Positions 3,783 through 28,890 of a stretch of 58,251 nucleotides of DNA are shown here, one piece after another. A program made the translations under genes and the position numbers. The stretch comes from Andalucia godoyi And28 (taxonomy: Eukaryota; Protista; Jakobida), in contig VRVR01000063.1 in assembly GCA_009859145.1 (NCBI GenBank), forward strand, positions 70,983 through 129,233. The letters run 5' to 3'. Within the stretch, counting starts at the first letter, position 1, and each line of letters begins with the position of its first letter. The notes beneath the pieces were generated by a model. It had not been told where the DNA came from and ran no database searches. It saw nothing but the letters and a program-made list of their open reading frames with translations.

Positions 3783-4340
3783 TCATTGGTCTTCGCTGTC
3801 ATTTTCGTCTGTTTCCGATGCTGCGGCGGGGCCTCGCCACCCTTTCGCCATCCACTCCTCTTGGCTGTGCGACGATCCTTTTCTTCCTGGAGGCCTTCCG
3901 ACATATTCACAATCCTCATTCTCTTCTGCGCATCGCTGGCATCGAGGAACTCTTCTGTCACAGCTCTTGTGCAAGCGACGGCACCTTCTGCATGAAAACA
4001 GCTGAAACCAAGTAATCTCATCCGTCTTCTGAACCTGTGCTGGCGGTGGGCCGGCATCTGTTGTGAGAGAAAGAAACGAAGATCCGCTGTCAAGGGTTGT
4101 TGTTTCTTGGGAATCAGGCTTGCCGTAAATCGTAGCATCTCTCGGATTTACCGGACCCTGGTGAGCGGCATGAACGATTTCGGCAGTCGACGCTGTATAT
4201 GTCTTAACTGGATGGAAACTGGCCTTTGCCATTCCTGAACGGGCGGCATCGTCCACTGTTCCCTGCTGAGACGATGTTGAAGCAGCCTGACAGGACTGTC
4301 GAGACCCAGTCTCCTGAACAAGTCGGAAATGAGAATGCAT
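3783..4340 (-). CDS. Zn2Cys6 binuclear cluster protein, subfamily A (A1); ORF ends shortly after the DNA-binding domain
   Basis: WFQLFS-CRRCRRLHKSCDRRVPRCQRCAEENEDC-EYVGRPPGR fits CX2CX6CX6CX2CX6C; followed by EWMAKGWRG. Confidence 0.85.
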   Translation of the reverse strand: MHSHFRLVQETGSRQSCQAASTSSQQGTVDDAARSGMAKASFHPVKTYTASTAEIVHAAHQGPVNPRDATIYGKPDSQETTTLDSGSSFLSLTTDAGPPPAQVQKTDEITWFQLFSCRRCRRLHKSCDRRVPRCQRCAEENEDCEYVGRPPGRKGSSHSQEEWMAKGWRGPAAASETDENDSEDQ

Positions 4341-4958
4341 AGACAGTTGCTTGGTGTGTATAGGTTCTTAGCAGAATCAAAGACCTCGATGAAAAGTACC
4401 CAGCGAAAGATGCTTTTTCGAGCCCTTGCGTGGTGGTTTAAACACTGAATTTTCGTGGGTTAAGCAGTAGCAGCTCACATGTCTACTGCACAACAGCCTC
4501 GACGGATGCCGATGGATACTGTCGGTGACAATTTCTAATTGCGTCATTCTACTTTCCTGAAGATGCGACGCGTGTGAGAGTCTTTCCGCGCGGAGTTGAC
4601 TTTGAACCATTTTGGCATCGTCACTGTAGACCATGCTTTTTGCCTGTATGTTGCCCCCAGCCCTGCACGGACAACTGATGAAAGTAATCCGGAGGGCCCC
4701 TCACTCTTAGCAAAAATTGTGACGCTGGCGGGGATCATTCCGCAGAGCTTCGTCGAGCCAGATACGAATCCACCACACAAAGCCAGACAGTATTGCTCGG
4801 ATAAGGCGGAAACGTTGCGGAGTATCTCAAAACTGTGTGCATTGGCCAACAAGTCTTGTACCCCGTACAACCCGAATTTTCGGCATATTTTGTGATTTAT
4901 TTCGAAGCTTCCCATTACGCGAGCCAGATTGATGGTGATGCACTGCACTGACCGACTT

Positions 4959-7331: not shown

Positions 7332-7642
7332 GGCTCCAGCTGCGACTCTGCTCTTGTGAAAAAGAACCCAGAAGCAATACGACAAAATGCCAGATTGTCT
7401 GTCGGAGGGAATGTGATTGTATTGGAAACAGCCGACTTTATACAAGTGTCATGGAAGTTCCAGTTGGTAAAAAATTTGGAAGAGATTATGCCATTCTTCC
7501 GGGGAATAGGATCAGTGAGAGTGCTTGCCCATGGCTCAAGCACCAAACAAAATAGGTACACTTGGTTTTGGATATGCATTTATTACAATTAAAGAAAAAT
7601 TGCCAAGTGAGAGATGTCCTCATAATTCGTCAACTAGCAAAA

Positions 7643-8685
7643 CTAGCTGCTGACGGACATACCCTGCGTTTAAACAATATTAGCATGAATACGGCTCCTT
7701 AGGGGGTTTTAGAGAACAAATTATGAACATACGCCATTCGGATGAAGGACTTGGCCTGTCATATAGCCACTGTCCCGAGCCGCGAGAAAGACATAACATC
7801 TATTTCTCGACAACAAAGGAAGAAAAAAGAAAACACTTGTCAGCTCAAAACGTCAAAAAACTGCGTATATACAGAGAAGAAAAAACAGATACCATACGGC
7901 GCAACTTCTTCTGGATGACCGTATCGCTTCATTTCAGCCTCTTTTCCGAAATCTTCCAATGTGGTTTCATCAAATCGGATGGGAAGAGGGGTCAAAATCG
8001 GACCAGGAGCAACCGCATTCACACGGATGCGCTTTTGTAACAGATACTTTGCAAGTGCTCGAGTAAACGTAACTTCGGCGCCTTTTGTTGAACCATAGTC
8101 AATAAGGTCTGGACGGGGGAGATACGCATCAACAGAAACTGTGTTGATGATGCAATCCCCCTCTGAAAGATAAGGAATTGCAGATTAGGCAAGAAAGAAG
8201 TACGAAAAGACATTGGAACGGAACACTCGCATCATTTGCTCTTCCGTTATGTCTTCAAATACCTTCTGCTGCAGCTGAATCGAACAGTTGTTGACCAGGA
8301 CGTTCAGCTTCTGGAATCGCTGCACAGTCTTCTGCACACATTCTGCGGCGAACACCTTGTCTCCTAAATCGCCACGCATTACAAGGCACTCGCTTCCTTC
8401 TTTCTCCACGAGTCTCTTTGTTTCATTTGCATCGTCGTCCTCGGGCGTGCTCAAATAGACGATTGCGATGTTTGCCCCTTCTCTTGCAAATAAAACGGCC
8501 ACCGATCGGCCGATACCAGAGTCTCCGCCTGTGATTAAGGCAACTTTGTCTTTTAATTTCAAGGATCCTTTGTACCAGGGTGCGTCGCAATGCGGTTGTT
8601 GGTGCATCTCGTACTGCAATCCAGGCATCCGATCCTGGTGCTCTTGTGGCATTTCCGGTGCGAACACCGACTTTGCAGACGACAT
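7643..8685 (-). pseudogene. Classical short-chain dehydrogenase/reductase, YhdF/YdaD (general stress protein 39)-like. Two introns (7800-7897, 7664-7732) and one in-frame TAA (8185-8187).
   Basis: YKGSLKLKDKVALITGGDSGIGRSVA, NNCS, DYGSTKG (YxxxK), RVNAVAPGP, P|CYVFLAARDSGYMTGQVLHPNG|GMSVSS. The TAA sits where Lys is usual (FLA*SAIPYL). Confidence 0.9.
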
Positions 8686-10040: not shown

Positions 10041-11255
10041 CTAGGAAGATGAGCAATGAGGGACACTGGCAAACGAAGCACGCCACGAAGGCAGCACGTC
10101 CCCGACAGTGTTTAGCCGCGAGAGCTCGGGAAAGCTCCCGAACGAAAGATTTGGACACGTAGCGACGGATTTTTGTAGGATAGTGAGGGTAGCTATGGAA
10201 GCAGAGCCGGGTAAATGCAGCAACTGGCCCCATGCCTCCGGAAGATCGACAACCAGCACCAATTCGGAATAGAACGAATCAACAATTGACAGCGGGAACA
10301 CTTCAACTTTCGATGTAACAGCCGTCTGTAAAATCGAATCGCCATTGATTATGATCATCAGCACGGGATCCTGCCGAGAAAAGCGGACGTGGATTGTGCA
10401 GATATCTCCGGAAATCCACATCAGGTCCCAAAATCGCAATTTCTGCAGCTGCGGAAGAGTTGAGAGAGACGGAAGATACGCGTCGTGGATTCGTGAAGGA
10501 TAAACGACGACCAGCAGTTCCTCGACATGCAAAAACCGGTGGCAGACGGATTGCATCCATTCCCATGCACAGATCGTCGATTCCTGACGCGGAAGACACA
10601 CAACGCGGTGAGCGATTGGCAGCAAATGACCAAAAGAGGACAGTGCACTTCCGATCTCAATGCAAATTTCCGTGCATCGGATTCTCTGTGCGAAAGCGAT
10701 CGATAAATTGACTTCCGCATCAGAAAAGCACAAAGATAGCGACCGAACGACCACGTCCCAGTACGGAAAATGGACTGCAATTCGAGCCAAATCGCCGACC
10801 GAAATCTCTGATCCGACATGCAGCGTTCCGTAGCAACCGCCAAACAAATTGTCTGCCGTGCCGTGTAGATCATCTTCCAGCAAATTTGTCGGGACATGCG
10901 GTAAAAGAGTGTGGACAACAGACGAACCATGAGAATAGACTCCGGGAATGCAAGGCAAAACGAAAACACTGGACAGCCGAAGCCGGGAATGATACAGACG
11001 ATATGCGTCGCACTCTTCCAAACTGGCAATGCGTATCGAACAGAGGGCAATCTGCATGCTTGGGAAACTGTGCAGGAACGCAGCGACTTTCGTTGGCCAA
11101 GCATCGTCCGGGAACGATACAACTCCTCCAATGGAAAACATGCTCAAGATAGACTGTTCGTGCTTTCGAGATACTAAACGGAGCGACAGGACATTCTCAT
11201 AACTCATAAAGGACAAGGTCCTTTGGAACGGTACAAATGGAAGATCAACGATCAT
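10041..11255 (-). CDS. F-box-like protein
   Basis: N-terminal DLPFVPFQRTLSFMSYENVLSLRLVSRK resembles the F-box consensus; ~400 aa intact ORF. Confidence 0.6.
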   Translation of the reverse strand: MIVDLPFVPFQRTLSFMSYENVLSLRLVSRKHEQSILSMFSIGGVVSFPDDAWPTKVAAFLHSFPSMQIALCSIRIASLEECDAYRLYHSRLRLSSVFVLPCIPGVYSHGSSVVHTLLPHVPTNLLEDDLHGTADNLFGGCYGTLHVGSEISVGDLARIAVHFPYWDVVVRSLSLCFSDAEVNLSIAFAQRIRCTEICIEIGSALSSFGHLLPIAHRVVCLPRQESTICAWEWMQSVCHRFLHVEELLVVVYPSRIHDAYLPSLSTLPQLQKLRFWDLMWISGDICTIHVRFSRQDPVLMIIINGDSILQTAVTSKVEVFPLSIVDSFYSELVLVVDLPEAWGQLLHLPGSASIATLTILQKSVATCPNLSFGSFPELSRLNTVGDVLPSWRASFASVPHCSSS

Positions 11256-11279: not shown

Positions 11280-11282
<3 letters not shown>

Positions 11283-11327: not shown

Positions 11328-11845
11328 ACAGTGGAGTGCTACGTTTTGTAGAGACGGGGGCGTTTGCTTTCTCGCCCAGTTCTTTCTCGAAAAGTGAAAA
11401 CCAAGACCAGTTCAACAACCACGTTTTTTTATACAGAAGCGACTCAAAATCGGAGGAACTGTGTCCCGCAAACATGCACGTCGGACATGAGAGCAGGAGA
11501 CGTGCAGCGCAATCTACTGACAGAGAAAAGTCTGTGGTCTTTCCCAGCAGTAAGACACCTCGGAGATAAACTAAAAATAAAATGCACAAAGAAAGTGGTT
11601 TAGAATGAAACTGCGCTAATGACAAGAACGACGGGTTGGGCACACTCCGTCGATTGACAAACTTGAGTTGAGCTTTCGTTTCGAAAAACAGAGAATCTCA
11701 GCTGTCATCCAGAGTGCTTGAATAAACAAAAAGAGAGGGACTATGAATTTTTCTCTCATGATGCACTGACTTTTTTTGGCACTTTCCATTCCTCAATTCG
11801 GTGCTTTTGAATATCACTGCGAGGTAGACACGAGGTTTCTGCACG

Positions 11846-12412
11846 ATGGACAAGCAAAGAGATTCTCACGACAATAAAACTGTGGCGGTCCCTGAATCCG
11901 CCTTCGATGTCGAAGCGCCCACGCCCATGAAGCAATCATCCGGAGTCGAGCGATGCTGTGAAGAAGAGACTGGACAACATAACCAGCCCATCCATTCAAA
12001 AATGACGTCGGCGGTCACGACATGCGTTCCGCGGGTCGATTCAAAAGAAAAAGGCCAAACGTTCCAACTGTTTTCCTGCGAGAGATGTCGTTCCTTGCAC
12101 CGGAAATGCGGCAGAGAAGGACCGCCGTGCAGACGGTGCGAAGAAGCGGGAGAATCGTGCAGGTATGTCGGAAAAGCGCCTGGGCGTCCCACGAAAATAA
12201 CCGAAAAGTATCAAGACACACGAAACGACTGGATGGCGAAGGGATGGCGAGGCCCGGCCTTACCGGATGAGCGAGAAAATGCTTCGTCCAGTCTGGCATC
12301 GTGCTCCACAGTCATTCTCTTCAAACATCGTAGTGAACAAGGAACGCAGTTATTCGGGGATCAGCGAAACTGTCAACACGAAGAAGACGACACTCGTCGT
12401 GGTTGCGACTAG
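11846..12412 (+). CDS. Zn2Cys6 protein, subfamily A (A2)
   Basis: FQLFS-CERCRSLHRKCGREGPPCRRCEEAGESC-RYVGKAPGRP...DWMAKGWRG. Confidence 0.85.
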   Translation: MDKQRDSHDNKTVAVPESAFDVEAPTPMKQSSGVERCCEEETGQHNQPIHSKMTSAVTTCVPRVDSKEKGQTFQLFSCERCRSLHRKCGREGPPCRRCEEAGESCRYVGKAPGRPTKITEKYQDTRNDWMAKGWRGPALPDERENASSSLASCSTVILFKHRSEQGTQLFGDQRNCQHEEDDTRRGCD

Positions 12413-13560
12413 GTGCCGCCGATTAACATGCCGCGCACCATTGATTGGGCCACGACCAGTGTCAACGGTTCTGTATGTGACTCCAGATCGACGGAGAATG
12501 GTTGTTCGAAATTGCCATGTGGATTAACAGCCTGCTGGGCAACATTCTTTGTAGAAGACTGGATGCTCCGTAAAAGAGGGGAGCGGGCGGGGGTCTCTGG
12601 GCATTCTGGGGTCGGCGAAGAATGCTCGACAGTCTGACGCCTCTGGAACAAAAGGTCGCTCCATCTACTACACGATTTTTCTGGGATGTCGCATTCCAAG
12701 ACTCTCGTGGCCCAAACAAAGGCAGTCGATCATCAAAGGAGGAAACGGTTGTGCGAAGGCTGTTCAAGGCTCATTGCACTGCTGGCTGTGCACGTGCTTT
12801 CGCAAGGCACCGCGAGACAAATGAAAAAAATGTGATTGGTGGGCGCAAATTTGCAGAAAAATCACCGAGACGCACTGCCAGCTATTCAACAGTTGCGGTA
12901 GCCACCACCTTGTGGACAACGCCTTGCAATCAGCAGCGGGGTTCATGGTCACATCCACACAACAACAGATGGAAACACGAAATGGAGACACAGTACTTCT
13001 GCTTCCAGAAAGACAAGAATGGATGCAAGACAGAGAAAAGGGCGAGTAGACGAATGCTGAGAAGCCTGCCGGAGTATTTTCGCAAGTACTTCCAAAACGG
13101 GGACGTCAGTGGCTGTCACTTGTCAGAGCGCATCGCTTTACCTTTTGAGCACAGTGGGAAAATAACAGTAGTAGTACATGTATGTGAAACTGTTTACGTT
13201 TGCAAGCTGTCGTTCCTTCTTCTGCGTGAAAGAGCACTAGGATTCGATAGACGCCCAGTAGTGCGCAAAGCTGCAGCCTTGGAAAGAGCTAGTAGACCAC
13301 TCGCTTCGTGAAGAATATATGCAGATGAGGAATGTCTTTTGTTCAAAATACGGCATCAAATGAAAAGGAGACGACGGAAGCGGACGGACACTGTGCATGA
13401 AACTTTAAATTTTCGAAGCCGAGTGTTCCGCATGTCGTTTCGCTGCAGTCGCAGTATTGGTATTGTTCTTCGTTCCACCCTTTCAGCAATCGCGGTAAGA
13501 AATGATCGTCGCAAAAATGACATGTTGACAGATCATCATGAAGAGGACGCGTGGACCAAG

Positions 13561-14154
13561 CTACGTGCAATCGTGGACCGGAGTGGTCGAAGAACCGAAT
13601 GCCAGCAATTGGTTTGCGACGCTTTGCAGTATGTAACGTTCGACACTGTCTGCCTGATTGACAAACGAAGCGTCGGGAATGCATTCGACGGACGGGAGAT
13701 ATGAAATGACGTTTGGAATGAAAAACAAAGGCAACGATGGCGCTTGAGGAACCGCACCGTCGGCGGTTTCAGCGATTGGACAAAAGGAACCCAAGGAATG
13801 GTGGTAAACACTGCCGAAGGAGGACCCAGCAGAGAATGCGTCGAAAGGAACATCGGTCTGCAATGCAAGATTGTCGTCGCGTCTCGTTTGCTGTGTTGTC
13901 GAATGCGGAAGAGAACATCCGAGAAACTTCCGCCATCGAGTCTCCATGCGGTGGCAAGAAGAGGTGTTCTTTTTGGAAAGATGCGTGCTTGCATCTGGAG
14001 ATTTCCTCGGTCTACCGGCAGTTATCCCTGTGTAAACGCATTCTCGACCGGTGCGTAAACATCTGTTGCATACGGGACCATGACGGTCGCATCTCTTGTG
14101 CTGCAAACGACAGGAAGCACAGGAAGTGCCTTGAAAGCATTCTGGAGATTTCAT
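13561..14154 (-). CDS. Zn2Cys6 protein, subfamily B (B1)
   Basis: S-CASCRLQHKRCDRHGPVCNRCLRTGREC-VYTGITAGRP; the ORF-end motif QLLAFGSSTTPVH is shared with B3. Confidence 0.85.
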   Translation of the reverse strand: MKSPECFQGTSCASCRLQHKRCDRHGPVCNRCLRTGRECVYTGITAGRPRKSPDASTHLSKKNTSSCHRMETRWRKFLGCSLPHSTTQQTRRDDNLALQTDVPFDAFSAGSSFGSVYHHSLGSFCPIAETADGAVPQAPSLPLFFIPNVISYLPSVECIPDASFVNQADSVERYILQSVANQLLAFGSSTTPVHDCT

Positions 14155-14838
14155 CTCGAGAGTTTAAATTTCGAAAGAATTCATTCTCTTTGTTAGTCGA
14201 CAGTCGCAAGCTGTTCGTAAAAACGAAAAGAAAACGAAAGAACGGCGCAAGTTCCAAGGGAAGAAGGAACGGAAATCAGTGGAAAAGTCTAACGAAGTCC
14301 GAGGATCGCGTGACCATACATTCAATGCATGCACAGCCGGCAAACACGGTCGTGATGCAACACAAGCGCAAGTACAACCGAATTTGGACATCTGAGCAAA
14401 CTCAAAATGGAAGTTCTTCCACTCTACAGTCCGGCGTTTCCCGTGTGTGGTCCAAGCATAATCGCACCAGTTCTGCCTGAGCGCAACCACTGCCTCTGAT
14501 CCGACACACTCCGCGACGGGACGCGTAACTAGAATGCAGAGTCGATAAACACTGTGAGGATTTAGGCCCCTTCTGGAGAAGCCCACTTCAGCCAAACACC
14601 GCAGTGGAACGAGGGGCGCCAATTTTCCTTGCCTCGGACAGCTCGCTTGACCCAGCATGGAGACGATACATTACGGTCGCAACAGTGGAACTTCCTAATA
14701 CCAAAACAATCGAACATCATTTGTATGGACGTGCTTTGCAAGAAGGTACAAATAGTTGAGCGATTCACTCCACCTCCGCAACCTCTCTCTGTTTTCCATG
14801 TAAAAACCGAGCAAACTCAAAAAAGGAACCCAAACACA

Positions 14839-15057
14839 ATGAACCGTCAACAAGACCAAGACAACGGCAACTCCAACAGCGGCAGCCAGCGTGGCTTTGC
14901 CGCAATGGACCCGCAGCAGCAGCAGTCCATTGCAAGCAAGGGCGGCTTGACTGCGCAGGCGCACGCCCACGGCTACGACAACCCGGACGACTACCAGCAG
15001 GCAAAAGACAAAGGTCAGGTCCAATTCTCGAAGGGCGAGACTCAAAATAAGGACTGA
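14839..15057 (+). CDS. KGG-repeat (PF10685; Con-10/YciG/GsiB-like) small hydrophilic stress protein, 72 aa (KGG1)
   Basis: RGFAAMDPQQQQSIASKGG matches the KGG motif; very hydrophilic. Confidence 0.85.
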   Translation: MNRQQDQDNGNSNSGSQRGFAAMDPQQQQSIASKGGLTAQAHAHGYDNPDDYQQAKDKGQVQFSKGETQNKD

Positions 15058-16143: not shown

Positions 16144-16512
16144 TCACCAGTGGGGGGAAGTCGTGCATTGTCTTCGGACTGCGTCTGCAATTCCACCGCG
16201 CGACCCAGTCGTCATCCAGTCGTGACTTTGATTATCTACGGAGAATATGACGGTTGGGCGCCCTGGTGCCCTGCCTTTGTACACGCATGCTTCGTTGCTG
16301 GACGCGCAACGGCCGCATCGTGGACCTCGTCTGTCGCACTTTTTGTGCAGCTTTCTGCAGGCAGTGCACGAGTACAGCTGATACCATCGTTCCGAAGATC
16401 CTTCTTGTTGGTTCAGCAATTCCCTGTGTGCGGAGGTGGAAATGGGAGCGGCCGCGGTTGTTGGGGTCCCATCAGGCTTCCCATCGCTCCTAGTCGCTCT
16501 AACTTCGTCCAT
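16144..16512 (-). CDS. Zn2Cys6 protein, subfamily A (A3)
   Basis: WYQLYS-CTACRKLHKKCDRRGPRCGRCASSNEAC-VYKGRAPGRP...DWMTTGSRG. Confidence 0.85.
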   Translation of the reverse strand: MDEVRATRSDGKPDGTPTTAAAPISTSAHRELLNQQEGSSERWYQLYSCTACRKLHKKCDRRGPRCGRCASSNEACVYKGRAPGRPTVIFSVDNQSHDWMTTGSRGGIADAVRRQCTTSPHW

Positions 16513-16953
16513 ACCAACAGCCTTCAGACAACAACAGTGCAGGTTCTGGGGGAGGCGGAAAACTGCTCGGCAGCAAGAATCTTTTTTTGATTTCTGCCAT
16601 TCATGGGCAAACTGTCCGCTAACGGCGGTCCTAGTGTCTTCAATTGACGCTTCGCGCACTGCCCAACAACTGCCCCGTCGACAGAAAAGCTCCTCATTGC
16701 TGTTGAAGGCGCTGCATGTCAGAATTGGTCATCGGTCTTTTTATGGCTAGAATCCAGACACGAAATGATACGGACCAAACCGTGTTATGTCAGCTGCATG
16801 CACTTCGTTGACTTCCAGCGACTGATACCACAAACTGGAAGGAAGCATCGATGCACACAGCGATGATAAAATCGATGACAAGCAACTCCTGCAAAAAAGA
16901 AATGCAGAAGATCATTCGTCCTGCTCTCCATTGTAGATGATTTGGCGCAGCTC

Positions 16954-17979: not shown

Positions 17980-18131
17980 ACGTGCAGCATACGGCGTGTT
18001 TCTGTTTTAAGCAATCACAATGGAAGTAGATACGAACCTTTTCTTCTTCAATAAAATGGTGTCATTTTTTGTAATGGAAAGGGTTCTTTTTACACCCACC
18101 ATGTGGGCGGCCGCTCCTCTCCAAGAGAGAT

Positions 18132-19304
18132 TTATTGTGGAAACAACGGCGACAATTCAACAATCTGTGATTCGTGGTCTATTTCTGAAGTAGGAGCGAA
18201 CTGATTCAACCGGGGATGATTCATTTGTGCGTTGCCATCATGCTGCTGGGCAAAACACTGCGCAGCAGTGTCGACGGAATGCTTGGTGCAGCTTGCATGT
18301 GGACGCTGAGTACTTGCGATCGCATCGCCAGGGCCAGGACGTTGGTACTGTCGCAAACCGAAATTTGCAGCATCAAGAATACTCTCTCCTTCAGAAACGT
18401 GTGTGGCTTCATGGCATGCGCCAACGATTCGAATCGGACAGTAGAACAGAGAAGGAGATGAAAATAGATTCCCGACTCCTGGAAACTGGAGAGACTGGTG
18501 ATGTTGCATCTGCAGATGGGTGGATGATGGAAAGTAAGAATACGGAGAAACTGAAAAGATCGAGGCGCCACAACCCAACAATCCAGGGGACGCGACGTGA
18601 TTTGCTTCTGAAGAACAGCGAAATGGGAATCGAGGGACGCTGTCGTTATGATCGCGACTGATCAACGGTTTGTCAGGCAGCAGACACCGTTGGTGATTTG
18701 TGTCGATCATAACTGAAAGCGTCGTAGGTCGAACCGTGTCATGCTGGGCAGTTTGATCCGGAGCCAAGGGTGCATGTAGATCTGGAGGTCGTAGAACCAC
18801 CTCATCTACGTACACTGTTGAAGAGTTCGACAGCAGACCAGGCGGTGCGGTTCTACTTGCAATTGTCGTATAAAGAGGATTCCCGCTGTTTGCGTTTGAC
18901 GGCTGAGAAACCGCATGTTTCCAGTCTTGCTGTGCCGCCGATCCGCCATCGGAAACGTCGGAAGCTGTTTGTGCCAACATCATCCTCGTCCATGTTCTCT
19001 TCGAATTTCGAGTTGGCACATGCTCGACTTGCAAATTCTTGGCTGGTTGCTTATTCCGGTAAACTTTGGAAAAACGATTCTTGTGCCTGTCGACTGACGG
19101 TGTCTCTTCATTGGTATATTCTCCAAAACCAGTGCCTCTCTCTCTTTTGAGAGGTCTGCCAGGGGTTTTTCCGGTGTACACACACTCGCGACGTCCGTGC
19201 ACGCACCGCAAACAAGGGGGTCCTGCGCGGTCGCATTTCTTGTGAAGACTTCGGCAAGCTACGCACGAAGTAGACTGCATTTGGTCAGGGTCACAATCCT
19301 GCAT
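18132..19304 (-). CDS. Zn2Cys6 protein, subfamily B (B2), ~390 aa
   Basis: S-CVACRSLHKKCDRAGPPCLRCVHGRREC-VYTGKTPGRP followed by a long low-complexity region; SLF...EA...NF..RQ..R.PG shared with B3. Confidence 0.85.
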   Translation of the reverse strand: MQDCDPDQMQSTSCVACRSLHKKCDRAGPPCLRCVHGRRECVYTGKTPGRPLKRERGTGFGEYTNEETPSVDRHKNRFSKVYRNKQPAKNLQVEHVPTRNSKRTWTRMMLAQTASDVSDGGSAAQQDWKHAVSQPSNANSGNPLYTTIASRTAPPGLLSNSSTVYVDEVVLRPPDLHAPLAPDQTAQHDTVRPTTLSVMIDTNHQRCLLPDKPLISRDHNDSVPRFPFRCSSEANHVASPGLLGCGASIFSVSPYSYFPSSTHLQMQHHQSLQFPGVGNLFSSPSLFYCPIRIVGACHEATHVSEGESILDAANFGLRQYQRPGPGDAIASTQRPHASCTKHSVDTAAQCFAQQHDGNAQMNHPRLNQFAPTSEIDHESQIVELSPLFPQ

Positions 19305-19870: not shown

Positions 19871-20314
19871 ATGACGACCACGCTGGGATTCCAGCTGCAT
19901 GTCAGCGATCCAGACAAAATCGCGTGGATATCGCACTCGGATGACTTGCAGGTGCATGTTGTCGGGAATGTGTGGGAGCTGGGGATGTGGCGTCCGGCAG
20001 GATTGCGAACGTTTATGCAGCGTCTGCCATCCGATAGTGCTCATACTTTATTCTACACGCTATCCGTTCAAATTCCTGCTGGCAAGTATTCTGTCATCGA
20101 GTACAAGTTTGTGATTTTCGACGTCTCGAAAGGCATCATTACATGGGAAGACAGGCTGGAGAGGAACAGAACCCGGAGTTTATTTCCAGGAAGTGACCCA
20201 TCTGCTTGCCCAGAATGCAACAAGCTGCGTTTAGAGGCGTGGAACACCCTGCACTTTCCATGTTCCTCCGTACACAAGCAAAGCGCATTCAAGATGAACA
20301 TTCACTTCCGCTGA
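19871..20314 (+). CDS. Stand-alone CBM20 starch/glycogen-binding protein, ~147 aa
   Basis: VHVVGNVWELGMW, VQIP, EYKFV, ITWE..ERNR are CBM20 hallmark segments; the ORF is open upstream to 19685. Confidence 0.75.
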   Translation: MTTTLGFQLHVSDPDKIAWISHSDDLQVHVVGNVWELGMWRPAGLRTFMQRLPSDSAHTLFYTLSVQIPAGKYSVIEYKFVIFDVSKGIITWEDRLERNRTRSLFPGSDPSACPECNKLRLEAWNTLHFPCSSVHKQSAFKMNIHFR

Positions 20315-20472: not shown

Positions 20473-20712
20473 TTACTCTCTCCAGTCCTTGTCCTTGTTC
20501 TGGGTCTCGCCCTTCGAGAATTCAACCTCGCCCTTGTCTTTTGCCTGCTGGTAATCGTCCGGGTTGTCGTAGCCATGGGCGTGCGCCTGCGCAGTCAAGC
20601 CGCCCTTGCTTGCAATGGACTGCTGCTGCTGCGGGTCCATTGCGGCAAAGCCACGCTGGCTGACGCTGTTGGAGTTGTCATTGTCTTGGTCTTGTTGACG
20701 GTTGCGATTCAT
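20473..20712 (-). CDS. KGG-repeat small stress protein, 79 aa (KGG2), near-identical to KGG1 in inverted orientation
   Basis: RGFAAMDPQQQQSIASKGG; TATAAATA-like element about 95 nt upstream of the ATG. Confidence 0.85.
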   Translation of the reverse strand: MNRNRQQDQDNDNSNSVSQRGFAAMDPQQQQSIASKGGLTAQAHAHGYDNPDDYQQAKDKGEVEFSKGETQNKDKDWRE

Positions 20713-21297
20713 GAGTGTTCTTGAGAGATATTCGATCTTGTTGGGCGTCAAATAAGTAAAAGTCCGCAGCAGTGAGGTTTCTTTCCACAGATAAGAGGCT
20801 ATATTTATACGGTTTGCTTCATGAGTACATACAATCCACTTCAAATTTTGTTTGTTTCTTGACCTTGGGAACTGCGGAATGGAAGCATTTTGAAGTGATG
20901 AGATCGGAAAAGCCGGCGCACAAAAATTGCTCCCGTGAAGTCGGAGGGCATGGGGAAACTTCCTTCCACTTCCATTTTCGGATCATCATGCGATTCTGCG
21001 TGGTTGCAGCGGCTGCCGCACCTGCTTGAAGCGGAAATAGACGTAAGAAAGATGCTTCGGCGGGTCTCGCCGCTGGTGAAAAAAATATTGCACCCGTGCA
21101 TTTTCCAGTTGTGCTCCTTCGTCGAAGCGCTATCATCCAAATGTAGTCCGTGCGTTTCTACAAAGCTGCATCGGACAAATGGATTATTCCTTTGCCCCAG
21201 CTGTCTTCTGCTATTTGTTAAATTCTGCAGAATATGTCCGTCTTTTCCTCCACTTTTCTTTTTTTATTGCCGGAAAAAAAACATCAAAGAGAGAGCC

Positions 21298-22229: not shown

Positions 22230-23631
22230 TCACTGGTTGCCATGCAAGTAGCTTTGCTCAATAATGGGCAATATGTGGTTCAGCTGGCTTAATAACTGCG
22301 CAGAAGATGCCTCCGACAGCACGACTATAGGACAGCAAACAGTCGATAGTCGGTCGAGAACGGTCAGAACGTCCATTGCGTGGCACTCGTTGATCCGCAG
22401 TCGCTGAATCGGAGTGGAGACGCCGACCAGAATATCAGCTGTCGATGGCAAGCGCGCGTCCGATCGCACAACAGGAGGTGGTAAGACTGTGGGCAACGAC
22501 ATTGGTCCGTTGTCACTGGAACCGTCTTGGGTACCATGATCTACCGCGTGATACGTACGAATCGATTCAGAACCTGATCGCTGACGGCTATCGAGGATAT
22601 GCTCAAGATCGTTATTCAAAACTGTTGGAACCGCTCGCTGTCGCTTTCTGCTTGGCTCGGACTCCGTCTCCATGTCACGGTCATTCGTGATACATGCTGC
22701 CGCCGCGCTGCCTGGACGTTCCTTGCAAGAAACCTGTGGTTCAGAGAGGTGATCATCATAACCGCCATCATCAGAATTCCCTTTCTCTTCATCATGTACA
22801 CTTGAAATCTGTTTTTCCGCTCGACACAGAACACTTGCACTCCCACGCTTAGCAGGTGGGGGCTGTGCAATTGGTATCGCTCTGCAGGCGTCTGAAGCCC
22901 AGGAACTTCTCGTATCTCGCTGCATCCAGTCATTTCTCTGGTCCTCAAATTCGCTGACGGATCTGTGGGCACGACCTGGAGGTTTTCCAACATACTTGCA
23001 TTCTTCTCCAGTCTGTGCGCAACGAGAAACACGGCGGGCCTTCTCTGCCACAGCTCTTGTGCTTCATACGACAGCATTCGCATGAAAACAGCTGAAACCA
23101 CCGGCTAGTCTGATGCGTACCAGGCAGTGACTGTGGGGCAGAAGCAGAACCGCCGCTCGGCAACAGCTGCAAGAGTCCGCATTGCAGCTGTTCTGCCTGT
23201 CGTGCAACAACCGCTTGACGGGAATGTGTAGTGTTGTTGGAGTACCAATGCGTTTGCAGAGGGGCAAGGGGCACCAATGGCAGGCTTGAAGGATACAATA
23301 GACGGGCACGATGCCGCCGTTCATCCGTGTCAAATCGCAGATGCGCGGTTGGAACCGTCAGAAACGGTACTGCAGAAGCGTGCAGAGCGCTTGGATAGGA
23401 AAGAGAATGGGGAGCCAAAGTCGCATGCAATTGCCGAGGAACAACGGGGGTGCATCCCAACTCTCCAGACTGGCCGTGCCGTGGATCGGCAGAATACGGA
23501 GCCATTGGGCGATTGAGTGATCTACTATCAGCCGAAAGAGGAGGTGGTGAAGGTACAGACAGTGGAACCGACAGTGGCGTGTCGTCACTGCGTCTCGGAT
23601 GCTGCCATTGTTGGCTGCCATTTTTTCTCAA
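22230..23631 (-). CDS. Zn2Cys6 protein, subfamily A (A4), split by a 1-nt insertion at ~23027-23029; start uncertain
   Basis: WFQLFSCECCRMKHKSCGREGPPC|SRCAQTGEECKYVGKPPGR...DWM. Removing one T from TGTTTCTCG joins ORFs 22945..23631 and 22230..23051. Confidence 0.8.
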
Positions 23632-24123: not shown

Positions 24124-25368
24124 TTGGCTAAGAGGTGCCTGATAAGCGCTGTTCCCTCAAGGCACGCACGCGACAAATGGATGCGCAGAGACTTCTCTGT
24201 CGACCGAATCTGCATAGGGCCTGGCGACGCGTACTTTCATCTGGTCGAAGAAAAGGAAGGTGCTCTTTTGTCCGCGCTGTTGAGAGGGTATGAGCATGGA
24301 AGGCGTTGCTTATGAGGCCTGTGCACTCAGCACCGATGAGTTTGGACTGCATGAATACTGCCGTGAACCGTTACCGAAATGCACAGTCTGCGGCGGACTA
24401 CCATCCCGGATGGCACCAGCAGGGATACGCCGAGCGCCTCCCCCGCAGCCGTGATGAATACTCGCCGATGCAAGACGAGTTTGCACGCACATGGAGAGGT
24501 TCTCGGTATCAGTGGATGCTAACGCATGTGTCGATCAGCAACGCTAGAAGGGCGCATTTCGCAAGACCGTTGAATGTGGCCGATGCCGAATTCGGCCAGG
24601 ATATTCTCTAGCACTTTGAAACCATTCTGTTAAAACTGATTCGAAGTGGGAGTACGTTCTTGGATACACGGCGGCTGCACGGGGGGTCCATTTCATGAAT
24701 ATCCAAGAAGAGGACGTAGATGATCTTGAAGTTAAACCAGTGAGCCTTCGCGGACGAACCATCCAGGTGATCCCAAAAATTGCGGATATCGAGATCAAGT
24801 CAGGCGGTGGTCCAGAGTTCCATGAAGGTGTGTGGCAAGTCGAAGGCCTCTCTTATGAGCATATTATGTCCACTGGCATTGCTTACCTCCAGATCGACGA
24901 CGGCATTCTCAGCGGCCGCCTGCGGTTCCGCAGACCGTTTCTTCCGGACGAAGCGCAGAACTGAAGTACAGCATCTCGCAGGAGTTTGGCAGCTTTCTGC
25001 GGCGATGATTGCAGGCATCTTGCGTCTCGGCTCCGTGGAACCGGCGGCAGACTATATGGTTGTCTTTCCGAATAGCCATCAGCACAAACTCGAACGCATC
25101 ACGGCGCACCGGACATTGGCATCATCCTCTCTCTCGATCACGCGCAAGGCAACCAGTGGATCACTTGGTGCGCCGGATCGTGTGTTTCTTCCTGGTGAAT
25201 CCAGAAGAGCGCAACGTCTCCACTTCAGACGTCGAGATTCTTCCGAGTCAGGTTCTTGACTATGAAACCACATGCCGCATTCGAGAAGCAATGATGAAGG
25301 AGTGTGCTGTGCTCAAAAAAGATCTCAATCGGGATTTCTACCACTTCTATAACGTTTGTGAACACTGA
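24124..25368 (+). pseudogene. DUF4246-family pseudogene, paralog of 51926..53497
   Basis: Fragments in three frames: ADYHPG, RGSRYQWM, PVSLRG..IQVIPKIADIE, HEGVWQVEG, FPNSHQHKL, FFLVNP..VST, LDYET.CRIR, CEH*. Several frameshifts, a stop, an internal deletion and WHVEG changed to WQVEG. Confidence 0.85.
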
Positions 25369-25855
25369 TTATGGCTCTTGAAATTCGGCACCTTCTTGAA
25401 GAAATGGACATAAATCAAACACTGCGACCATTTTACACACTGTCCATTCCAAAACAGAGATTTCTAAAGCAGCAATGCACATCCGAGAATGAACATGGCA
25501 TAGGGAAGACGGCGGCAGTGCTGGTGCCTGTCCAAGGAAATCTTTGCCATTGTAGGTCGCCAACAGTCATCGTTTCATTTCCGTGTCTACATTACAAGCA
25601 CTCATTCTATCTTCATGCCAGGTGTGCGGAAATGAACTGGGCATCCCGGAAATCATTTAATGGCCCAAGCAAGAAATTGCTCGCACAGCCTGTTTTCCGC
25701 TGCCGATACTTGCGATCACACTCGACGGCTTGTTTTGTCAGCCAAAAAAGTAAGGACTTTCGTCTTTCGTACTAATCTGTAAAGGATTTTGTTTTCTCCT
25801 TTTTTTTTTTTTTTGGTTTTATTGCTTCTACATTTTGTTATTTCCGGACTCCAAA

Positions 25856-26998
25856 ATGCTGCAGAAACGGACGCTTCCAAAGTTCGACGAAGTTTGGAAT
25901 TCGACGGTGTCAGACAGGTCGTTCTTCGCAACAGGTTGTCCACCAAACAAGCGTCCTAGAATGCCGTTGGGTCTACTCGAGTCTTCTTTGCCGCCCTTTG
26001 CTATCCCGTATCAAAAACGCGTAGAATGCCCACCAGAGTTCCAGCTACCAATCCCATTGGGTTGTTTTCATCACCAAACTGCGTATCCTTTGACGATCGA
26101 CGGTTTTGTTTTCAACAGGGAAAGCAGTTCATCCCATGTTTGTCAAATCCAAGATCACAGACGCCACGACGTTTCTGGGTCATGTTGTGAGAGTGTATGC
26201 GACTCCACGTTTTACAATGATGCGGAGCGATTTCGAGAGAAAACGCATTTTGTCGATCGAACGCAAACAATTCCACTTCTCCAGTGTTCTGCTTTTCGAA
26301 CTGCCTCCAACAGTCCTGAGCACGCTCCGGCGCTCTTCAGTGACCATTTGCCTACGATTCCACGAATGGATTTGCATTCCTCCTCAATTGCTGGAGGAAA
26401 ATTTCCCATTCCATATGACCCGCTTCCAAAAATAGTTCCAGACAGAAATGCCGTTCTACTTTCTCTTGCCAGGATTGAACAGGCACCTCCGCTTTCAGTC
26501 AGTTATTATCCAGTCGGCGTGTGTGCGAAACAGAATTCTTCAGCTGCGTATCGTCGGGGAGTATGCAAACCGGGGCAGCTTCGTGTGGAGTTTGGCCTTA
26601 CTTCCCTGCAAGGCAGGCTTCCATTTGCAGAATGTAGGAGAAAAATTTTAGAGCGTGCGGATGCCGAGCACATGAAGCTGTTCCAGGAGGACTGTCTGCA
26701 CGCAGTTGCCATCTTGAAACTTCCTCAGAAACTCTGCAGACGATCCTTTGCATTCCGGCTTCTCATGATAACCTTTCATGTTACCGCAATTTCCGGTTAC
26801 ATTCCCCGATTCTGGATGACCGCCAATCAGTCTGTGGTGTTTCACACGCTCCCAGACTGCGCGAAGTGGTTTTTGCCCGAAATTGCTGTTCTTGTACACG
26901 ACCGTCGGTTATCCACAAACGGGGCGGAATTTCTGCTGGACAGCATGAAATGGGCTCAGAGCCATTATGAGTCGTTGATAGATTCTCAAAGTGCATGA
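25856..26998 (+). CDS. Hypothetical protein, 380 aa; Pro/Ser-rich N-terminal part and globular C-terminal ~150 aa
   Basis: Long ORF following a poly-T tract; no recognised family. Confidence 0.65.
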   Translation: MLQKRTLPKFDEVWNSTVSDRSFFATGCPPNKRPRMPLGLLESSLPPFAIPYQKRVECPPEFQLPIPLGCFHHQTAYPLTIDGFVFNRESSSSHVCQIQDHRRHDVSGSCCESVCDSTFYNDAERFREKTHFVDRTQTIPLLQCSAFRTASNSPEHAPALFSDHLPTIPRMDLHSSSIAGGKFPIPYDPLPKIVPDRNAVLLSLARIEQAPPLSVSYYPVGVCAKQNSSAAYRRGVCKPGQLRVEFGLTSLQGRLPFAECRRKILERADAEHMKLFQEDCLHAVAILKLPQKLCRRSFAFRLLMITFHVTAISGYIPRFWMTANQSVVFHTLPDCAKWFLPEIAVLVHDRRLSTNGAEFLLDSMKWAQSHYESLIDSQSA

Positions 26999-27981
26999 AA
27001 CATATCATCAAGATAGCGAATCGAATTCAATCATCGTTGTTGGCTCCCGTTGCAGACTCTTGATCTCTGATGCGTGTAACACATCCGAAGCGCCTCCTTC
27101 TTATCACGACATATTTATTTGAACAGTTTTAGTATAGTACACCTGTGTTCTTGATACTACCTGAAAAAACCGATGTGATCACAGATTTACAGGTTGTTGA
27201 AAGGATGCTGTATTGCGCAAGCCCCCAAGAAAAACAGATCTTACAGTGTCACCCCGAAGAAATAAAACGACAGCATTTTAGTAACATATCCCTTCATAAT
27301 TCTTTGGTCAATCTGTGAACAGAAGCTCAGTTGGGCGTGCGCGGCGTTTCAAAAAGATAGGTGAATCATACAAGGAACATTTCCCGAACGTTAGGGCAAG
27401 GAAATATCTAAGCATGCCAAAAATCCGAGAAAGGAATCATCTGAAGTGTCACAAAGCAAAACGTTGCGGCAGGCACAAATGCGACGCCGCTTCCAGGGTG
27501 GACGAGTTTCTTGTTGCTACCAAGTTGCGTTTGCTCAGCGGTGTGCGTGAACAAGAAGCTGCTTTGCAGAATCGTGGATCGCACGAATGCTTATACGTCG
27601 CAGCGCGGATCCGACGTCCAGTATGCATCTGTAGCGCGGTTTCCGAATGCGCTACTCATGCTGGGCACGCTTTTTCCTGCGCCGAGTTTGCTTTGGGGCG
27701 TTTTGAATTTGCGCCAACTCGACCTGGCGCAAAACAAGACAGCGCGCGAAAACTTCTTTGGTCTCCGCTAGAGTGGAGCTGTGTGTTGTGCCGTCCTTGC
27801 CAGTGCTAGCTGTTATAGAACAGCATCCGTTTACAATAGGACCGCTGACGACAAACCTCCTGTTGCCTCAGAAACCTTTCTGAACCAAAGGAGTATTTGC
27901 TCACAGTCATCCACCTGCGGCAAATGAAAGGGGATCTGGAAATAGCAACAGCACATCATGGTGAAGCGAAATCAATACAAA

Positions 27982-28890
27982 TCATCTGCAGTAATGAACT
28001 GGGATGGTGGAAGTTCCAAATGACAGCAATTGCTCCACCATGCTGTCGATAAAGACGTTCCCGGGAGCTCTATTGACGGTCTGTCGTCTAAAATTAGTGC
28101 CGGCGCTGCCTACAACTTTCTCCCGAGCTTCATCAAGAGGGTTTGAAATTTGTATAGAACAAAAAAGCGACGCCGTTAAAGACGATACGGAAGCATTGTG
28201 GCCATCAGTTGCAGCAGTATATGGCACCCACGACCTGTGTTCAGGAGTGTACAATGCAGCAGCAGGACAGACTGGAAATGGAGGACGGTTCGAAGACACT
28301 TCTTCTGCGATGTTCGAGGGAGCCGCGGAAGGAACGTGAGTTGCGGAGGACGAAAGTCTCAGCAGTGTGCGGTCATCGAACACACAGCGATTTCCAGTTT
28401 CCTGCGTCAGCATCGCCGAAAAAAACTTGGACATCGCATCATGCGGATTCAGATCGCATTCATCACATAAAGAATAAGGAACTGTTTCTCCCCTATTCAT
28501 AGAGGTTAGCATCAACGAGAATTCGTTTGGACGCAGCCACAGACCGTTCCGAATGGCAGGCATCGGAAGTGCGGCTGATGATGACAAAGAAGAACCAACT
28601 TCTAGAAAAGGCTGAATGAGAGTATATGTGCACTGTTTCTTCTTGCTGCTTTCTACGATTGGGGAATCTGACATGCTGGAGCATTTTTTGGGCCTTCCAG
28701 CTGGTTTTCCGGCATATACACATTGCCGACCCGTTCGCAAACATCTGTTGCAAACAGGTGCGTGACGGTCACATTTCCTGTGGATTTTCCGACATGACGT
28801 ACATGATTTTCTCTGTATGCATGCCGGTGATTCTAACTCGGAGCTCTCCATTGTTGTTGGGTAATTGACTTTGACTGAGAAAGAAACCAT
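27982..28890 (-). CDS. Zn2Cys6 protein, subfamily B (B3)
   Basis: S-CTSCRKIHRKCDRHAPVCNRCLRTGRQC-VYAGKPAGRP; ORF end QLLSFGTSTIPVH. Confidence 0.85.
   Translation of the reverse strand: MVSFSVKVNYPTTMESSELESPACIQRKSCTSCRKIHRKCDRHAPVCNRCLRTGRQCVYAGKPAGRPKKCSSMSDSPIVESSKKKQCTYTLIQPFLEVGSSLSSSAALPMPAIRNGLWLRPNEFSLMLTSMNRGETVPYSLCDECDLNPHDAMSKFFSAMLTQETGNRCVFDDRTLLRLSSSATHVPSAAPSNIAEEVSSNRPPFPVCPAAALYTPEHRSWVPYTAATDGHNASVSSLTASLFCSIQISNPLDEAREKVVGSAGTNFRRQTVNRAPGNVFIDSMVEQLLSFGTSTIPVHYCR

What the first reader, a model, noticed from the sequence alone, without database searches (positions are those of the whole stretch)
3783..28890. Seven GAL4-type Zn2Cys6 genes in two subfamilies with unusual flanking motifs
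Seen: all seven have CX2CX6CX6CX2CX6C with His in the recognition loop (CRxxHxxC, where Gal4 has CRLKKLKC). Subfamily A (3.8, 11.8, 16.1, 22.2 kb) adds (W)[FY]QL[FY]S before the first Cys and [DE]WM (usually followed by ..G.RG) after the GRxPGR linker. Subfamily B (13.6, 18.1, 28.0 kb) shares distal motifs: QLL.FG.ST.PVH in B1 and B3, and SLF...EA...NF..RQ in B2 and B3. I saw no Fungal_trans middle region. Established: the domain is mainly fungal, with sporadic protist occurrences. Inference: a lineage-specific local expansion, possibly with altered DNA specificity.
Basis: partly seen in the sequence, partly recalled or inferred. Interest (0 to 1): 0.72.

Follow-up and report, generated by a model that had tools for sequence, protein, structure and literature searches.

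The report
Unannotated Zn2Cys6 gene cluster, jakobid
A 25-kb stretch of the nuclear genome of the free-living protist Andalucia godoyi holds seven open reading frames (six intact, one frameshifted) plus one decayed relic of the "fungal" Gal4-type zinc-cluster DNA-binding domain; they are missing from the deposited proteome but otherwise look like an ordinary lineage-specific family of transcription-factor genes.

Summary
Six intact CX2CX6CX6CX2CX6C domains pass Pfam Zn_clus. A seventh (A4) is split by one extra T in a T-run. I found an eighth, decayed B-type relic at 19990-20162. The window is Andalucia godoyi (Jakobida, Discoba), not a fungus. The seven ORFs are absent from the deposited proteome, although interleaved neighbours are present. 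Their only close relatives among 1.84 billion representative proteins are two dispersed A. godoyi genes, ANDGO_00592 and ANDGO_02627. Synonymous sites across the domain are saturated while non-synonymous differences stay at 0.18-0.42, and the reading frames stay open for 194-422 codons, so the copies are old and were kept under selection. The "unusual" His is not unusual. Yeast Put3 has His at the same position and uses it to read the second G of CGG. The exact [FY]QL[FY]S and [DE]WM..G.RG motifs occur in none of the 150 best database hits, but a fungal subgroup has similar flanks (xYS-Cys1, YPGRAPRR). There is no Fungal_trans domain and no Gal4-like coiled coil. Zn2Cys6 expansions in Discoba are already known (71 in Naegleria). 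Verdict: a new member of a known kind, of moderate interest mainly for annotation and for the patchy distribution of this domain.

The parts
3783..4340 (-). A1: 185-aa ORF (ATG to stop). Zn2Cys6 DBD at 3909-3992, WFQLFS before Cys1, GRPPGRK linker, EEWMAKGWRG, then an acidic tail that ends 41 aa after Cys6.
   Evidence: (PF00172 30.7 bits)
11846..12412 (+). A2: 188-aa ORF. DBD at 12077-12160, TFQLFS, GKAPGRP, NDWMAKGWRG.
   Evidence: (31.6 bits)
13561..14154 (-). B1: 197-aa ORF with the DBD at the N-terminus (14038-14121). FQGTS before Cys1, GITAGRPRK linker, C-terminal QLLAFGSSTTPVHDCT.
   Evidence: (36.4 bits)
16144..16728 (-). A3: open frame of 194 codons. The first ATG at 16512 gives 122 aa, so the start is uncertain. 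DBD at 16285-16368, WYQLYS, GRAPGRP, HDWMTTGSRG.
   Evidence: (36.8 bits)
18132..19304 (-). B2: 390-aa ORF from ATG 19304. DBD at 19182-19265, MQSTS before Cys1, GKTPGRPLKRER linker, long low-complexity tail with weak collinear similarity to B3.
   Evidence: (29.2 bits)
19990..20162 (-). Decayed B-type relic. One frame reads SSPAC..C.S.RRK..C.R..C with three stops; a second frame reads LSDGRRCINVRNPAGR, against B3 LRTGRQCVYAGKPAGR.
   Evidence: 43.2 bits against a shuffle maximum of 38.1, 0 of 150
22230..23505 (-). A4: the long A-type copy, about 425 codons from ATG 23505 if read through. DBD at 22998-23082, interrupted by one extra T in the T-run at 23027-23029. WFQLFS, GKPPGRA, NDWMQRDTRS (G.RG lost), and a roughly 250-aa C-terminal extension that stays open in the +1 frame.
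   Evidence: (no Pfam hit for either half)
27982..28890 (-). B3: 302-aa ORF from ATG 28890, or 289 aa from ATG 28851. DBD at 28720-28803, IQRKS before Cys1, GKPAGRPKK linker, C-terminal QLLSFGTSTIPVHYCR.
   Evidence: (32.7 bits)

Best explanation
This is a tandem, birth-and-death array of a lineage-specific family of Zn2Cys6 (Gal4-type binuclear zinc cluster) DNA-binding protein genes in the nuclear genome of the jakobid Andalucia godoyi. It holds six intact copies, one copy with a single-base frameshift and one decayed relic, interleaved with annotated orphan genes. The deposited gene models missed them.

Shown: the domain identity, the organism, the absence from the proteome, the two dispersed paralogues as the only close relatives, the old age of the duplicates with selection on the domain, and the lack of a Fungal_trans domain or a Gal4-like coiled coil.

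Inferred mechanism: the six Cys bind two Zn ions. The first helix (CxxCRxxHxxC) enters the major groove and reads a CGG-like triplet, with the His contacting the second G as in Put3. Because no coiled coil follows the domain, the proteins probably bind as monomers, as Pho7 and AlcR do. The conserved N-flank (Q..S, or [FY]QL[FY]S) and the basic G[KR]xPGRP linker, with [DE]WM..G.RG in subfamily A, would then extend the DNA contact outside the triplet. The B-type and dispersed members carry long disordered tails. A1-A3 are little more than a DNA-binding domain.
For: Domain: PF00172 above cut-off in 6 of 7 copies. A profile search of the PDB hits Lac9, Ppr1, Gal4, Hap1 and Put3 at E 5e-7 to 1e-4. 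Q-4, S-1, the six Cys, R, H, P, Y and G..GR are invariant.

Organism: window ORFs match EukProt entries exactly, and the paralogues are named ANDGO_. The genome is compact and intron-poor, as published (PMC7050145).

Unannotated: three profile or sequence searches fail to return the window's own ORFs. The neighbours 10041-11255, 16954-17979, 37799-39733 and 40386-41672 are in the proteome.

Lineage-specific: only ANDGO_00592 and ANDGO_02627 share His plus the GRP linker. DBD identity to them is 52-62%.

Selection: pS 0.65-1.08 against pN 0.18-0.42, and frames of 194-422 codons against 0-2 such ORFs per shuffled window.

Birth and death: the A4 frameshift and the relic.

Mechanism: Put3 has His at the same position, and that His contacts the second G of CGG; Pho7 is a monomer with both flanks in the minor groove (PMC6265462). 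A heptad scan scores the Gal4 control at 1.0 and all nine Andalucia proteins at 0.5 or less.
Against: There is no expression evidence. The ORFs are absent from an annotation that was built with RNA-Seq, so they may be silent or non-functional. Codon-usage scores are near zero, and the training genes themselves score only +0.07 to +0.20 bits per codon. The surrounding region is full of decayed paralogues. The AF2 model of the domain plus flanks was unusable (pLDDT 51.5), so nothing shows that the flanks are ordered or touch DNA. The heptad scan is crude. No CGG-pair enrichment was found in the cluster's DNA. Monomeric binding and flank-DNA contacts are analogy only.
Confidence: 0.68

Rival explanations
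1. The ORFs are non-functional remnants. A once-active Zn2Cys6 family is decaying in a duplication-rich, pseudogene-rich region, and the annotators rightly left the ORFs out.
For: The ORFs are absent from the proteome while their neighbours are present. A4 is frameshifted and a fully decayed relic exists. A1-A3 stop 41-83 aa after Cys6, whereas A4 and the dispersed paralogues are 425-744 aa, which could reflect truncation. DUF4246, kinase and LRR pseudogene pieces lie nearby. The codon-usage signal is weak.
Against: All six Cys and ten other positions are invariant in six copies, although synonymous sites are saturated. Frames of 194-422 codons are not expected in neutral sequence. The real relic shows what decay looks like here: three stops and a frameshift within 60 codons. 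Removing the one extra T from A4 restores the invariant Arg (C-S-R-C), so its lesion is very recent or is a homopolymer error in a 454-based assembly.
Confidence: 0.2
2. One reading: the His in the recognition helix and the new flanks give these proteins a DNA specificity that departs from the CGG triplet of fungal zinc clusters.
For: The His is invariant in all nine family members. The exact [FY]QL[FY]S and [DE]WM..G.RG motifs are absent from the 150 best hits. Flanks can add specificity, as in Pho7.
Against: Put3 has the same His and still reads CGG. His is present in 17% of the domains among the hits. A fungal subgroup has similar flanks with Lys at this position. The flanks may add contacts, but nothing shows that recognition of the core triplet has changed.
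Confidence: 0.1
3. Fungal origin: contaminating fungal DNA, or a recent horizontal transfer of fungal zinc-cluster genes.
For: Outside Andalucia, the best named hits are yeast proteins, and A3 is 60% identical to fungal P0085 over 42 columns.
Against: The ORFs are interleaved with genes that match the A. godoyi proteome exactly. The closest relatives are A. godoyi genes. Synonymous sites are saturated between copies. There is no Fungal_trans domain, whereas all five fungal look-alikes tested have one. GC content is uniform across the window.
Confidence: 0.02

Closest known systems
ANDGO_00592 (744 aa) and ANDGO_02627 (496 aa), annotated hypothetical proteins of Andalucia godoyi
   Same: They have the same DBD with His, GPPC and the G[RK]xxGRP linker. 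ANDGO_00592 also has Q at -4, S at -1 and a WM 13 residues after Cys6. DBD identity to the window copies is 52-62%. Zn_clus is their only Pfam domain.
   Different: They are dispersed elsewhere in the genome, much longer and annotated. They lack [FY]QL[FY]S and [DE]WM..G.RG. The B1/B3 C-terminal motif is not detectably shared with them.
Put3 of Saccharomyces cerevisiae (PDB 1ZME, 1AJY)
   Same: It has the CxxCRxxHxxC recognition helix with His at the position of Gal4 Lys18. That His contacts the second G of CGG (PMC6265462).
   Different: Put3 is a homodimer with a coiled coil and a large regulatory region. It has no PGRP linker and none of the A-type or B-type flanks.
Gal4, Lac9 and Ppr1 DNA-binding domains (PDB 1D66, 1CLD, 1PYI)
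   Same: These are the best solved-structure matches, E 5e-7 to 3.5e-6. The Cys spacing and the conserved Pro are identical.
   Different: They have Lys instead of His. A coiled-coil dimerisation element follows their linker (Gal4 control 1.0 against 0.5 or less here). The full-length proteins have a fungal regulatory architecture.
Pho7 of Schizosaccharomyces pombe (PDB 6E33, 6O19) and AlcR: monomeric Zn2Cys6 binders
   Same: These are the closest working analogy. One Zn2Cys6 module without a coiled coil binds as a monomer. In Pho7 the peptide segments on both sides of the module lie in the minor groove and extend the footprint to 14 bp.
   Different: Sequence similarity is weak (E 0.01-0.1). 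Pho7 has Asn at the His position and its flanks have different sequences. The analogy is untested here.
Fungal subgroup with xYS-Cys1 and YPGRAPRR (P0082 of Wickerhamomyces ciferrii, plus P0085, P0099, P0117, P0124, P0136, P0141). From memory these resemble S. cerevisiae Stb5; that is a lead, not a test.
   Same: An aromatic residue and Ser come before Cys1 (P0085 reads LQLYS-C). Y.G[RK]AP.R follows Cys6. Identity to subfamily A over 42 columns is 40-60%.
   Different: They have Lys rather than His, PRR rather than PGRP, and no DWM..G.RG. All five tested carry Fungal_trans.
Zn2Cys6 expansions in non-fungal eukaryotes, especially Naegleria gruberi (71 proteins), Ectocarpus (24) and Capsaspora (7)
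   Same: These are lineage-specific expansions of the domain outside fungi, with non-fungal architectures. Naegleria belongs to Discoba, as Andalucia does (PMC5611559; PMC5415576).
   Different: No Naegleria-like protein could be identified among the closest hits. The tools could not test any relationship between the Andalucia and Naegleria families.

Membership tests
Zn2Cys6 binuclear cluster DNA-binding domain (Pfam PF00172, Gal4 type) | Six cysteines spaced CX2CX6CX5-12CX2CX6-8C | tested here: met
   CX2CX6CX6CX2CX6C in six copies. The seventh meets it only if one extra T is ignored.
Zn2Cys6 binuclear cluster DNA-binding domain (Pfam PF00172, Gal4 type) | Profile match above Pfam's gathering score | tested here: met
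   29.2-36.8 bits against a cut-off of 21 for six copies. The two halves of A4 give no hit.
Zn2Cys6 binuclear cluster DNA-binding domain (Pfam PF00172, Gal4 type) | Sequence similarity to solved Zn2Cys6 structures, with the conserved Arg after Cys2, a basic or His residue at the Gal4 Lys18 position, and Pro between Cys3 and Cys4 | tested here: met
   Lac9, Ppr1, Gal4, Hap1 and Put3 at E 5e-7 to 1e-4. R, H and P are invariant. His matches Put3.
Zn2Cys6 binuclear cluster DNA-binding domain (Pfam PF00172, Gal4 type) | Binds two Zn(II) ions and sequence-specific DNA | not testable with these tools
   This needs recombinant protein, metal analysis and EMSA or PBM.
Zn2Cys6 binuclear cluster DNA-binding domain (Pfam PF00172, Gal4 type) | The predicted fold matches the two-helix binuclear cluster | tested here: inconclusive
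   AF2 on an 8-row alignment gave mean pLDDT 51.5 and pTM 0.23. Two short helices fall at the expected places, but the model is too poor for a fold search.
Classical fungal zinc-cluster transcription factor (Zn_clus + coiled coil + Fungal_trans middle homology region) | Fungal_trans (PF04082) or Fungal_trans_2 regulatory domain | tested here: not met
   No hit in any window ORF or in the two ANDGO paralogues. All five fungal look-alikes tested have it.
Classical fungal zinc-cluster transcription factor (Zn_clus + coiled coil + Fungal_trans middle homology region) | Coiled-coil dimerisation element after the linker | tested here: not met
   In a crude heptad scan the Gal4 control scored 1.0 at residues 50-70. 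All nine Andalucia proteins scored 0.5 or less, and four have no Pro-free 21-aa window. No dedicated coiled-coil predictor was available.
Monomeric Zn2Cys6 binders (Pho7, AlcR) | Binds DNA as a monomer, with the flanking peptides contacting DNA | not testable with these tools
   This is analogy only. It needs SEC-MALS, footprinting or a structure of the complex.
AT-hook minor-groove motif | R-G-R-P core flanked by basic residues | tested here: not met
   The linker reads [PA]-G-R-P, so the first Arg is missing. No Pfam AT_hook hit at E 0.01 or better.

The most novel reading that the evidence does not exclude
The A-type proteins (A1-A3, 120-190 aa) may be a new kind of stand-alone Zn2Cys6 mini-protein. 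In this reading the conserved [FY]QL[FY]S segment before Cys1 and the [DE]WM..G.RG segment after the PGRP linker form a lineage-specific extension of the DNA-binding module. That extension would give a monomer a long asymmetric footprint. Because the proteins lack any effector region, they would act as competitors or modulators of the longer family members (B-type, ANDGO_00592, ANDGO_02627) at shared sites. This would be a self-contained regulatory circuit built from one domain, in a lineage far from fungi.
Probability: 0.15. Interest if true: 0.55.

Novelty: new member of a known kind. Interest (0 to 1): 0.36.

Why it matters
The Zn2Cys6 domain is the textbook "fungal-specific" DNA-binding domain, and its patchy occurrence elsewhere has no agreed explanation (PMC5415576, PMC5611559). 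A selected family of at least nine members in a jakobid gives a second Discoba lineage, after Naegleria, that carries the domain. That bears on whether the domain is ancient in eukaryotes or spread by transfer. The practical point is that a published, RNA-Seq-guided annotation of a compact genome missed a whole cluster of transcription-factor-like genes. Censuses of transcription factors that rely on predicted proteomes will therefore undercount them. The conserved flanks offer a small, tractable system for asking how peptide segments next to a Zn2Cys6 module shape DNA recognition.

Tried and rejected
1. A family-wide C-terminal "QLL" motif shared by B1/B3 with ANDGO_00592, A4, B2 and ANDGO_02627 looked convincing by eye. 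An HMM built from B1+B3 scored none of them above decoys in 1158 sequences, so I rejected it. The motif is specific to B1/B3.

2. Codon-usage coding potential trained on seven window genes was inconclusive, because bias in this genome is weak.

3. AF2 on the domain plus flanks gave pLDDT 51.5, so it was not interpreted and not sent to fold search. I did not add non-window sequences to deepen the alignment because the tool does not allow them.

4. Only a gapped similarity is weakly significant.

5. Similarity between B1 and B2 after the linker, and between the B1 and B3 mid-regions, is not above shuffles.

6. Three possible extra relics do not hold up. The site at 18077-18172 reads CRRC...SGRP in another frame, and 12789-12872 and 7781-7909 have inconsistent Cys spacing; I treated all three as chance.

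7. Transposon or terminal-inverted-repeat reading of the 14.8/20.6 kb inverted repeat: the arms are two KGG-motif ORFs, not element ends.

8. CGG-pair enrichment (inverted, direct, everted; spacers 0-15) in 1-30 kb gave nothing beyond |z| of about 2.8 in 48 tests.

9. A shared upstream element: the 7-mer AAAGTCA lies upstream of 5 of 7 genes (2 of 200 shuffles). It has no extended context, mixed orientation and variable distance, so I kept it only as a lead.

10. AT-hook reading of the PGRP linker: the first Arg of the core is missing and there is no Pfam hit.

11. Exact-product contig look-ups found nothing on record.

12. Rfam and tRNA scans of the window were empty.

13. Literature searches for Zn clusters in jakobids or Andalucia found no report.
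Full report

A six-frame scan for C-X2-C-X6-C-X5-12-C-X2-C-X6-9-C finds six intact motifs, all with the exact spacing CX2CX6CX6CX2CX6C. They lie at 3909-3992(-), 12077-12160(+), 14038-14121(-), 16285-16368(-), 19182-19265(-) and 28720-28803(-). There are none between 29 and 58 kb. A looser scan finds the seventh copy near 23.05 kb(-). It reads WFQLFSCECCRMKHKSCGREGPPC in one frame and RCAQTGEECKYVGKPPGR...NDWM in the +1 frame. The six intact copies pass Pfam Zn_clus (PF00172) at 29-37 bits against a gathering score of 21, and the two halves of the seventh do not. A profile of the six hits the solved DNA-binding domains of Lac9, Ppr1, Gal4, Hap1/Cyp1 and Put3 at E 5e-7 to 1e-4.

All seven copies share Q at -4, S at -1, the six Cys, R after Cys2, the His, a Pro, and C.Y.G...GR.
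- Before Cys1: WFQLFS, TFQLFS, WYQLYS, WFQLFS.
- After the linker: EWMAKGWRG, DWMAKGWRG, DWMTTGSRG. A4 has DWMQRDTRS and has lost G.RG.

QLL.FG.ST.PVH is the extreme C-terminus of B1 and B3 (E=1.4e-4). The B2/B3 pattern SLF...EA...NF..RQ does not hold with the stated spacing. A gapped alignment of the post-linker regions is weakly significant (SW 55, 3 of 500 shuffles).

I also found an eighth, decayed B-type relic at 19990-20162(-). It consists of two collinear pieces in different frames with three stops. Together they score 43.2 bits, against a maximum of 38.1 in 150 shuffles.

**2. Where does the window come from?**

The best-conserved neighbour is a DUF4246 ORF at 51926-53572(-). It has an identical entry in the protein collection, and its closest named paralogues are ANDGO_06865, ANDGO_07361, ANDGO_07690 and ANDGO_06854 from EukProt. 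Four further window ORFs match EukProt entries exactly, and one of them clusters with ANDGO_03355. ANDGO is the locus-tag prefix of Andalucia godoyi (EP00762), a jakobid in Discoba. The published genome is about 20 Mb, compact and intron-poor. It was assembled from 454 reads and corrected with Illumina reads (PMC7050145). The window's long uninterrupted ORFs fit that description. The genome is therefore not fungal.

**3. The ORFs are not in the deposited proteome.**

Three searches failed to return the window's own ORFs:
- A full-length B2 search of 5.8 billion proteins returned nothing.
- A profile of six copies returned nothing at E up to 10.
- An exhaustive hmmsearch of 1.84 billion representatives with a subfamily-A profile gave a best hit of only 70 bits. 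The window's own A1-A3 would score far higher.

By exact look-up, the neighbours 10041-11255(-), 16954-17979(+), 37799-39733(+) and 40386-41672(-) are present, while A1, A2 and B1 are not. The region was therefore annotated, and the Zn-cluster ORFs were skipped.

**4. Relatives.**

Among the 150 best hits, only two combine the His with the G[RK]xxGRP linker. P0071 also has Q at -4, S at -1 and a WM 13 residues after Cys6; the other is P0072. They are ANDGO_00592 (744 aa) and ANDGO_02627 (496 aa) of A. godoyi. Zn_clus is their only Pfam domain. Their DBDs are 52-62% identical to the window copies, which is as close as the window copies are to each other.

No hit contains [FYW]QL[FY]S or [DE]WM..G.RG. 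A permissive tabulation, however, shows a fungal subgroup of 7 of the 150 hits with xYS-Cys1 (P0085 reads LQLYS-C) and Y[PV](G)[RK]APRR after Cys6. All five that I tested carry Fungal_trans. The A-type flanks therefore have a partial fungal precedent.

A neighbour-joining tree on 42 ungapped columns supports only A2+A4 (73%), B1+B3 (88%) and the fungal trio (90%). The two dispersed Andalucia genes sit between A and B without support. Duplication within each subfamily is supported. A purely local origin of the whole cluster is not shown.

**5. Live genes or relics?**

At DNA level the copies resemble each other only over the DBD-coding stretch. Nei-Gojobori counts on 42 codons give pS 0.65-1.08, which is saturated, against pN 0.18-0.42. 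The duplicates are therefore old, and the domain was under purifying selection for most of that time. The six intact copies lie in open frames of 194-422 codons, whereas shuffled windows give 0-2 ORFs of at least 190 codons. The true relic shows what neutral decay looks like in this region.

A4's lesion is one extra T in the run at 23027-23029. Without it the codons read C-S-R-C and restore the Arg that is invariant in the other six. Given the 454 origin of the assembly, this is either a very recent mutation or a residual homopolymer error.

Against function:
- There is no expression evidence.
- Codon-usage scores are near zero in a genome with weak bias.
- The window is rich in decayed paralogues of other families.
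- A1-A3 end 41-83 residues after Cys6, while A4 and the dispersed genes are much longer.

I put about 0.7 on at least most copies being functional genes and about 0.2 on relics.

**6. How it most likely works.**

The His aligns with Gal4 Lys18. Put3 chains 1ZME and 1AJY read CLSCRKRHIKC, with His at the same place. According to Garg et al. [quoted passage not shown] His occurs in 42 of 244 domains among the hits, although that set is biased by the query. The His therefore argues for canonical CGG-type reading, not against it.

No Gal4-like coiled coil follows the linker. In a crude heptad scan the Gal4 control scored 1.0 and all nine Andalucia proteins scored 0.5 or less. There is no Fungal_trans domain either. 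The nearest working precedent is Pho7. It is a monomer whose N- and C-terminal flanks lie in the minor groove and extend the footprint to 14 bp.

By analogy I propose monomeric binding, with the Q..S or [FY]QL[FY]S N-flank and the basic G[KR]xPGRP linker (plus [DE]WM..G.RG in subfamily A) adding contacts. These steps are inferred. The AF2 model was too poor to test them (pLDDT 51.5). The PGRP linker does not meet the AT-hook definition.

**7. Comparison with what is known, and novelty.**

Zn2Cys6 proteins outside fungi are documented: 7 in Capsaspora, 24 in Ectocarpus and 71 in Naegleria gruberi, the last with non-fungal architectures (PMC5611559; PMC5415576). Naegleria and Andalucia both belong to Discoba. 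I found no report for jakobids.

The finding is a new member of a known kind: a lineage-specific, locally clustered, unannotated family with its own flanking motifs. It is not a new mechanism. It matters for annotation, for transcription-factor censuses, and for the debate on the domain's origin.

**8. Verdict.**

The lineage-specific local expansion in a non-fungal genome holds. The inference of altered specificity from the His does not, and the flanks are only partly without precedent. Interest is 0.36.

Noticed in passing
window 24294-25365 (+): Pieces of a DUF4246 / 2OG-Fe(II)-oxygenase-like gene in at least three frames, 26-60% identical to the intact gene at 51926-53572(-). This is a decayed paralogue lying between A4 and B3.
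   Followed up: partly
window 30196-31077 (-), 35526-37430 (-), 37799-39733 (+): A kinase-like family. A divergent pair is 56% identical over 624 aa, and a truncated third copy is 80% identical to residues 71-292 of the 37799-39733 gene. The Pkinase match is below Pfam's cut-off (26.7 against 31.7 bits).
   Followed up: partly
window 31970-35260 (+) and 54600-58100 (both strands): A 1096-codon LRR protein ORF, with several decayed partial copies of its C-terminal half (42-74% identity, multiple frames) at the far end of the window.
   Followed up: no
window 14566-15054 (+) and 20476-20982 (-): An inverted pair of small ORFs with a KGG stress-protein repeat (PF10685, 27 bits). Their core is a 213-nt inverted repeat, 94% complementary (14842-15054 / 20491-20703), bracketing A3, an orphan gene, B2 and the relic.
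   Followed up: partly
window 4597, 5016, 11767, 15450, 16223, 19387, 23690, 28866, 47148: The 7-mer AAAGTCA occurs 9 times in the window (about 13 expected). Eight copies lie inside the Zn-cluster region and five lie within 350 bp upstream of a Zn-cluster ORF (2 of 200 shuffles). There is no extended conservation, and orientation and distance vary.
   Followed up: partly
window 10041-11255 (-), 16954-17979 (+), 25856-26998 (+): Orphan ORFs interleaved with the Zn-cluster ORFs. The first two are in the A. godoyi proteome. None has a Pfam or PDB match or a paralogue in the window.
   Followed up: partly
window 47659-48396 (-): An amino-acid permease ORF of 245 aa that covers only positions 25-228 of the 427-position Pfam profile. 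It is either truncated or split by an intron.
   Followed up: no
window 3786-4367, 11828-12409, 16147-16728: The stop-to-stop frames of A1, A2 and A3 are all exactly 194 codons long, although the domain sits at different offsets. I take this as coincidence.
   Followed up: no
window 88-1863 (+): A 591-codon ORF with no Pfam hit that is not in the proteome as such. Its codon-usage score is higher on the opposite strand (+0.114) than in its own frame (-0.068), so the real gene here may be antisense to the long ORF.
   Followed up: no
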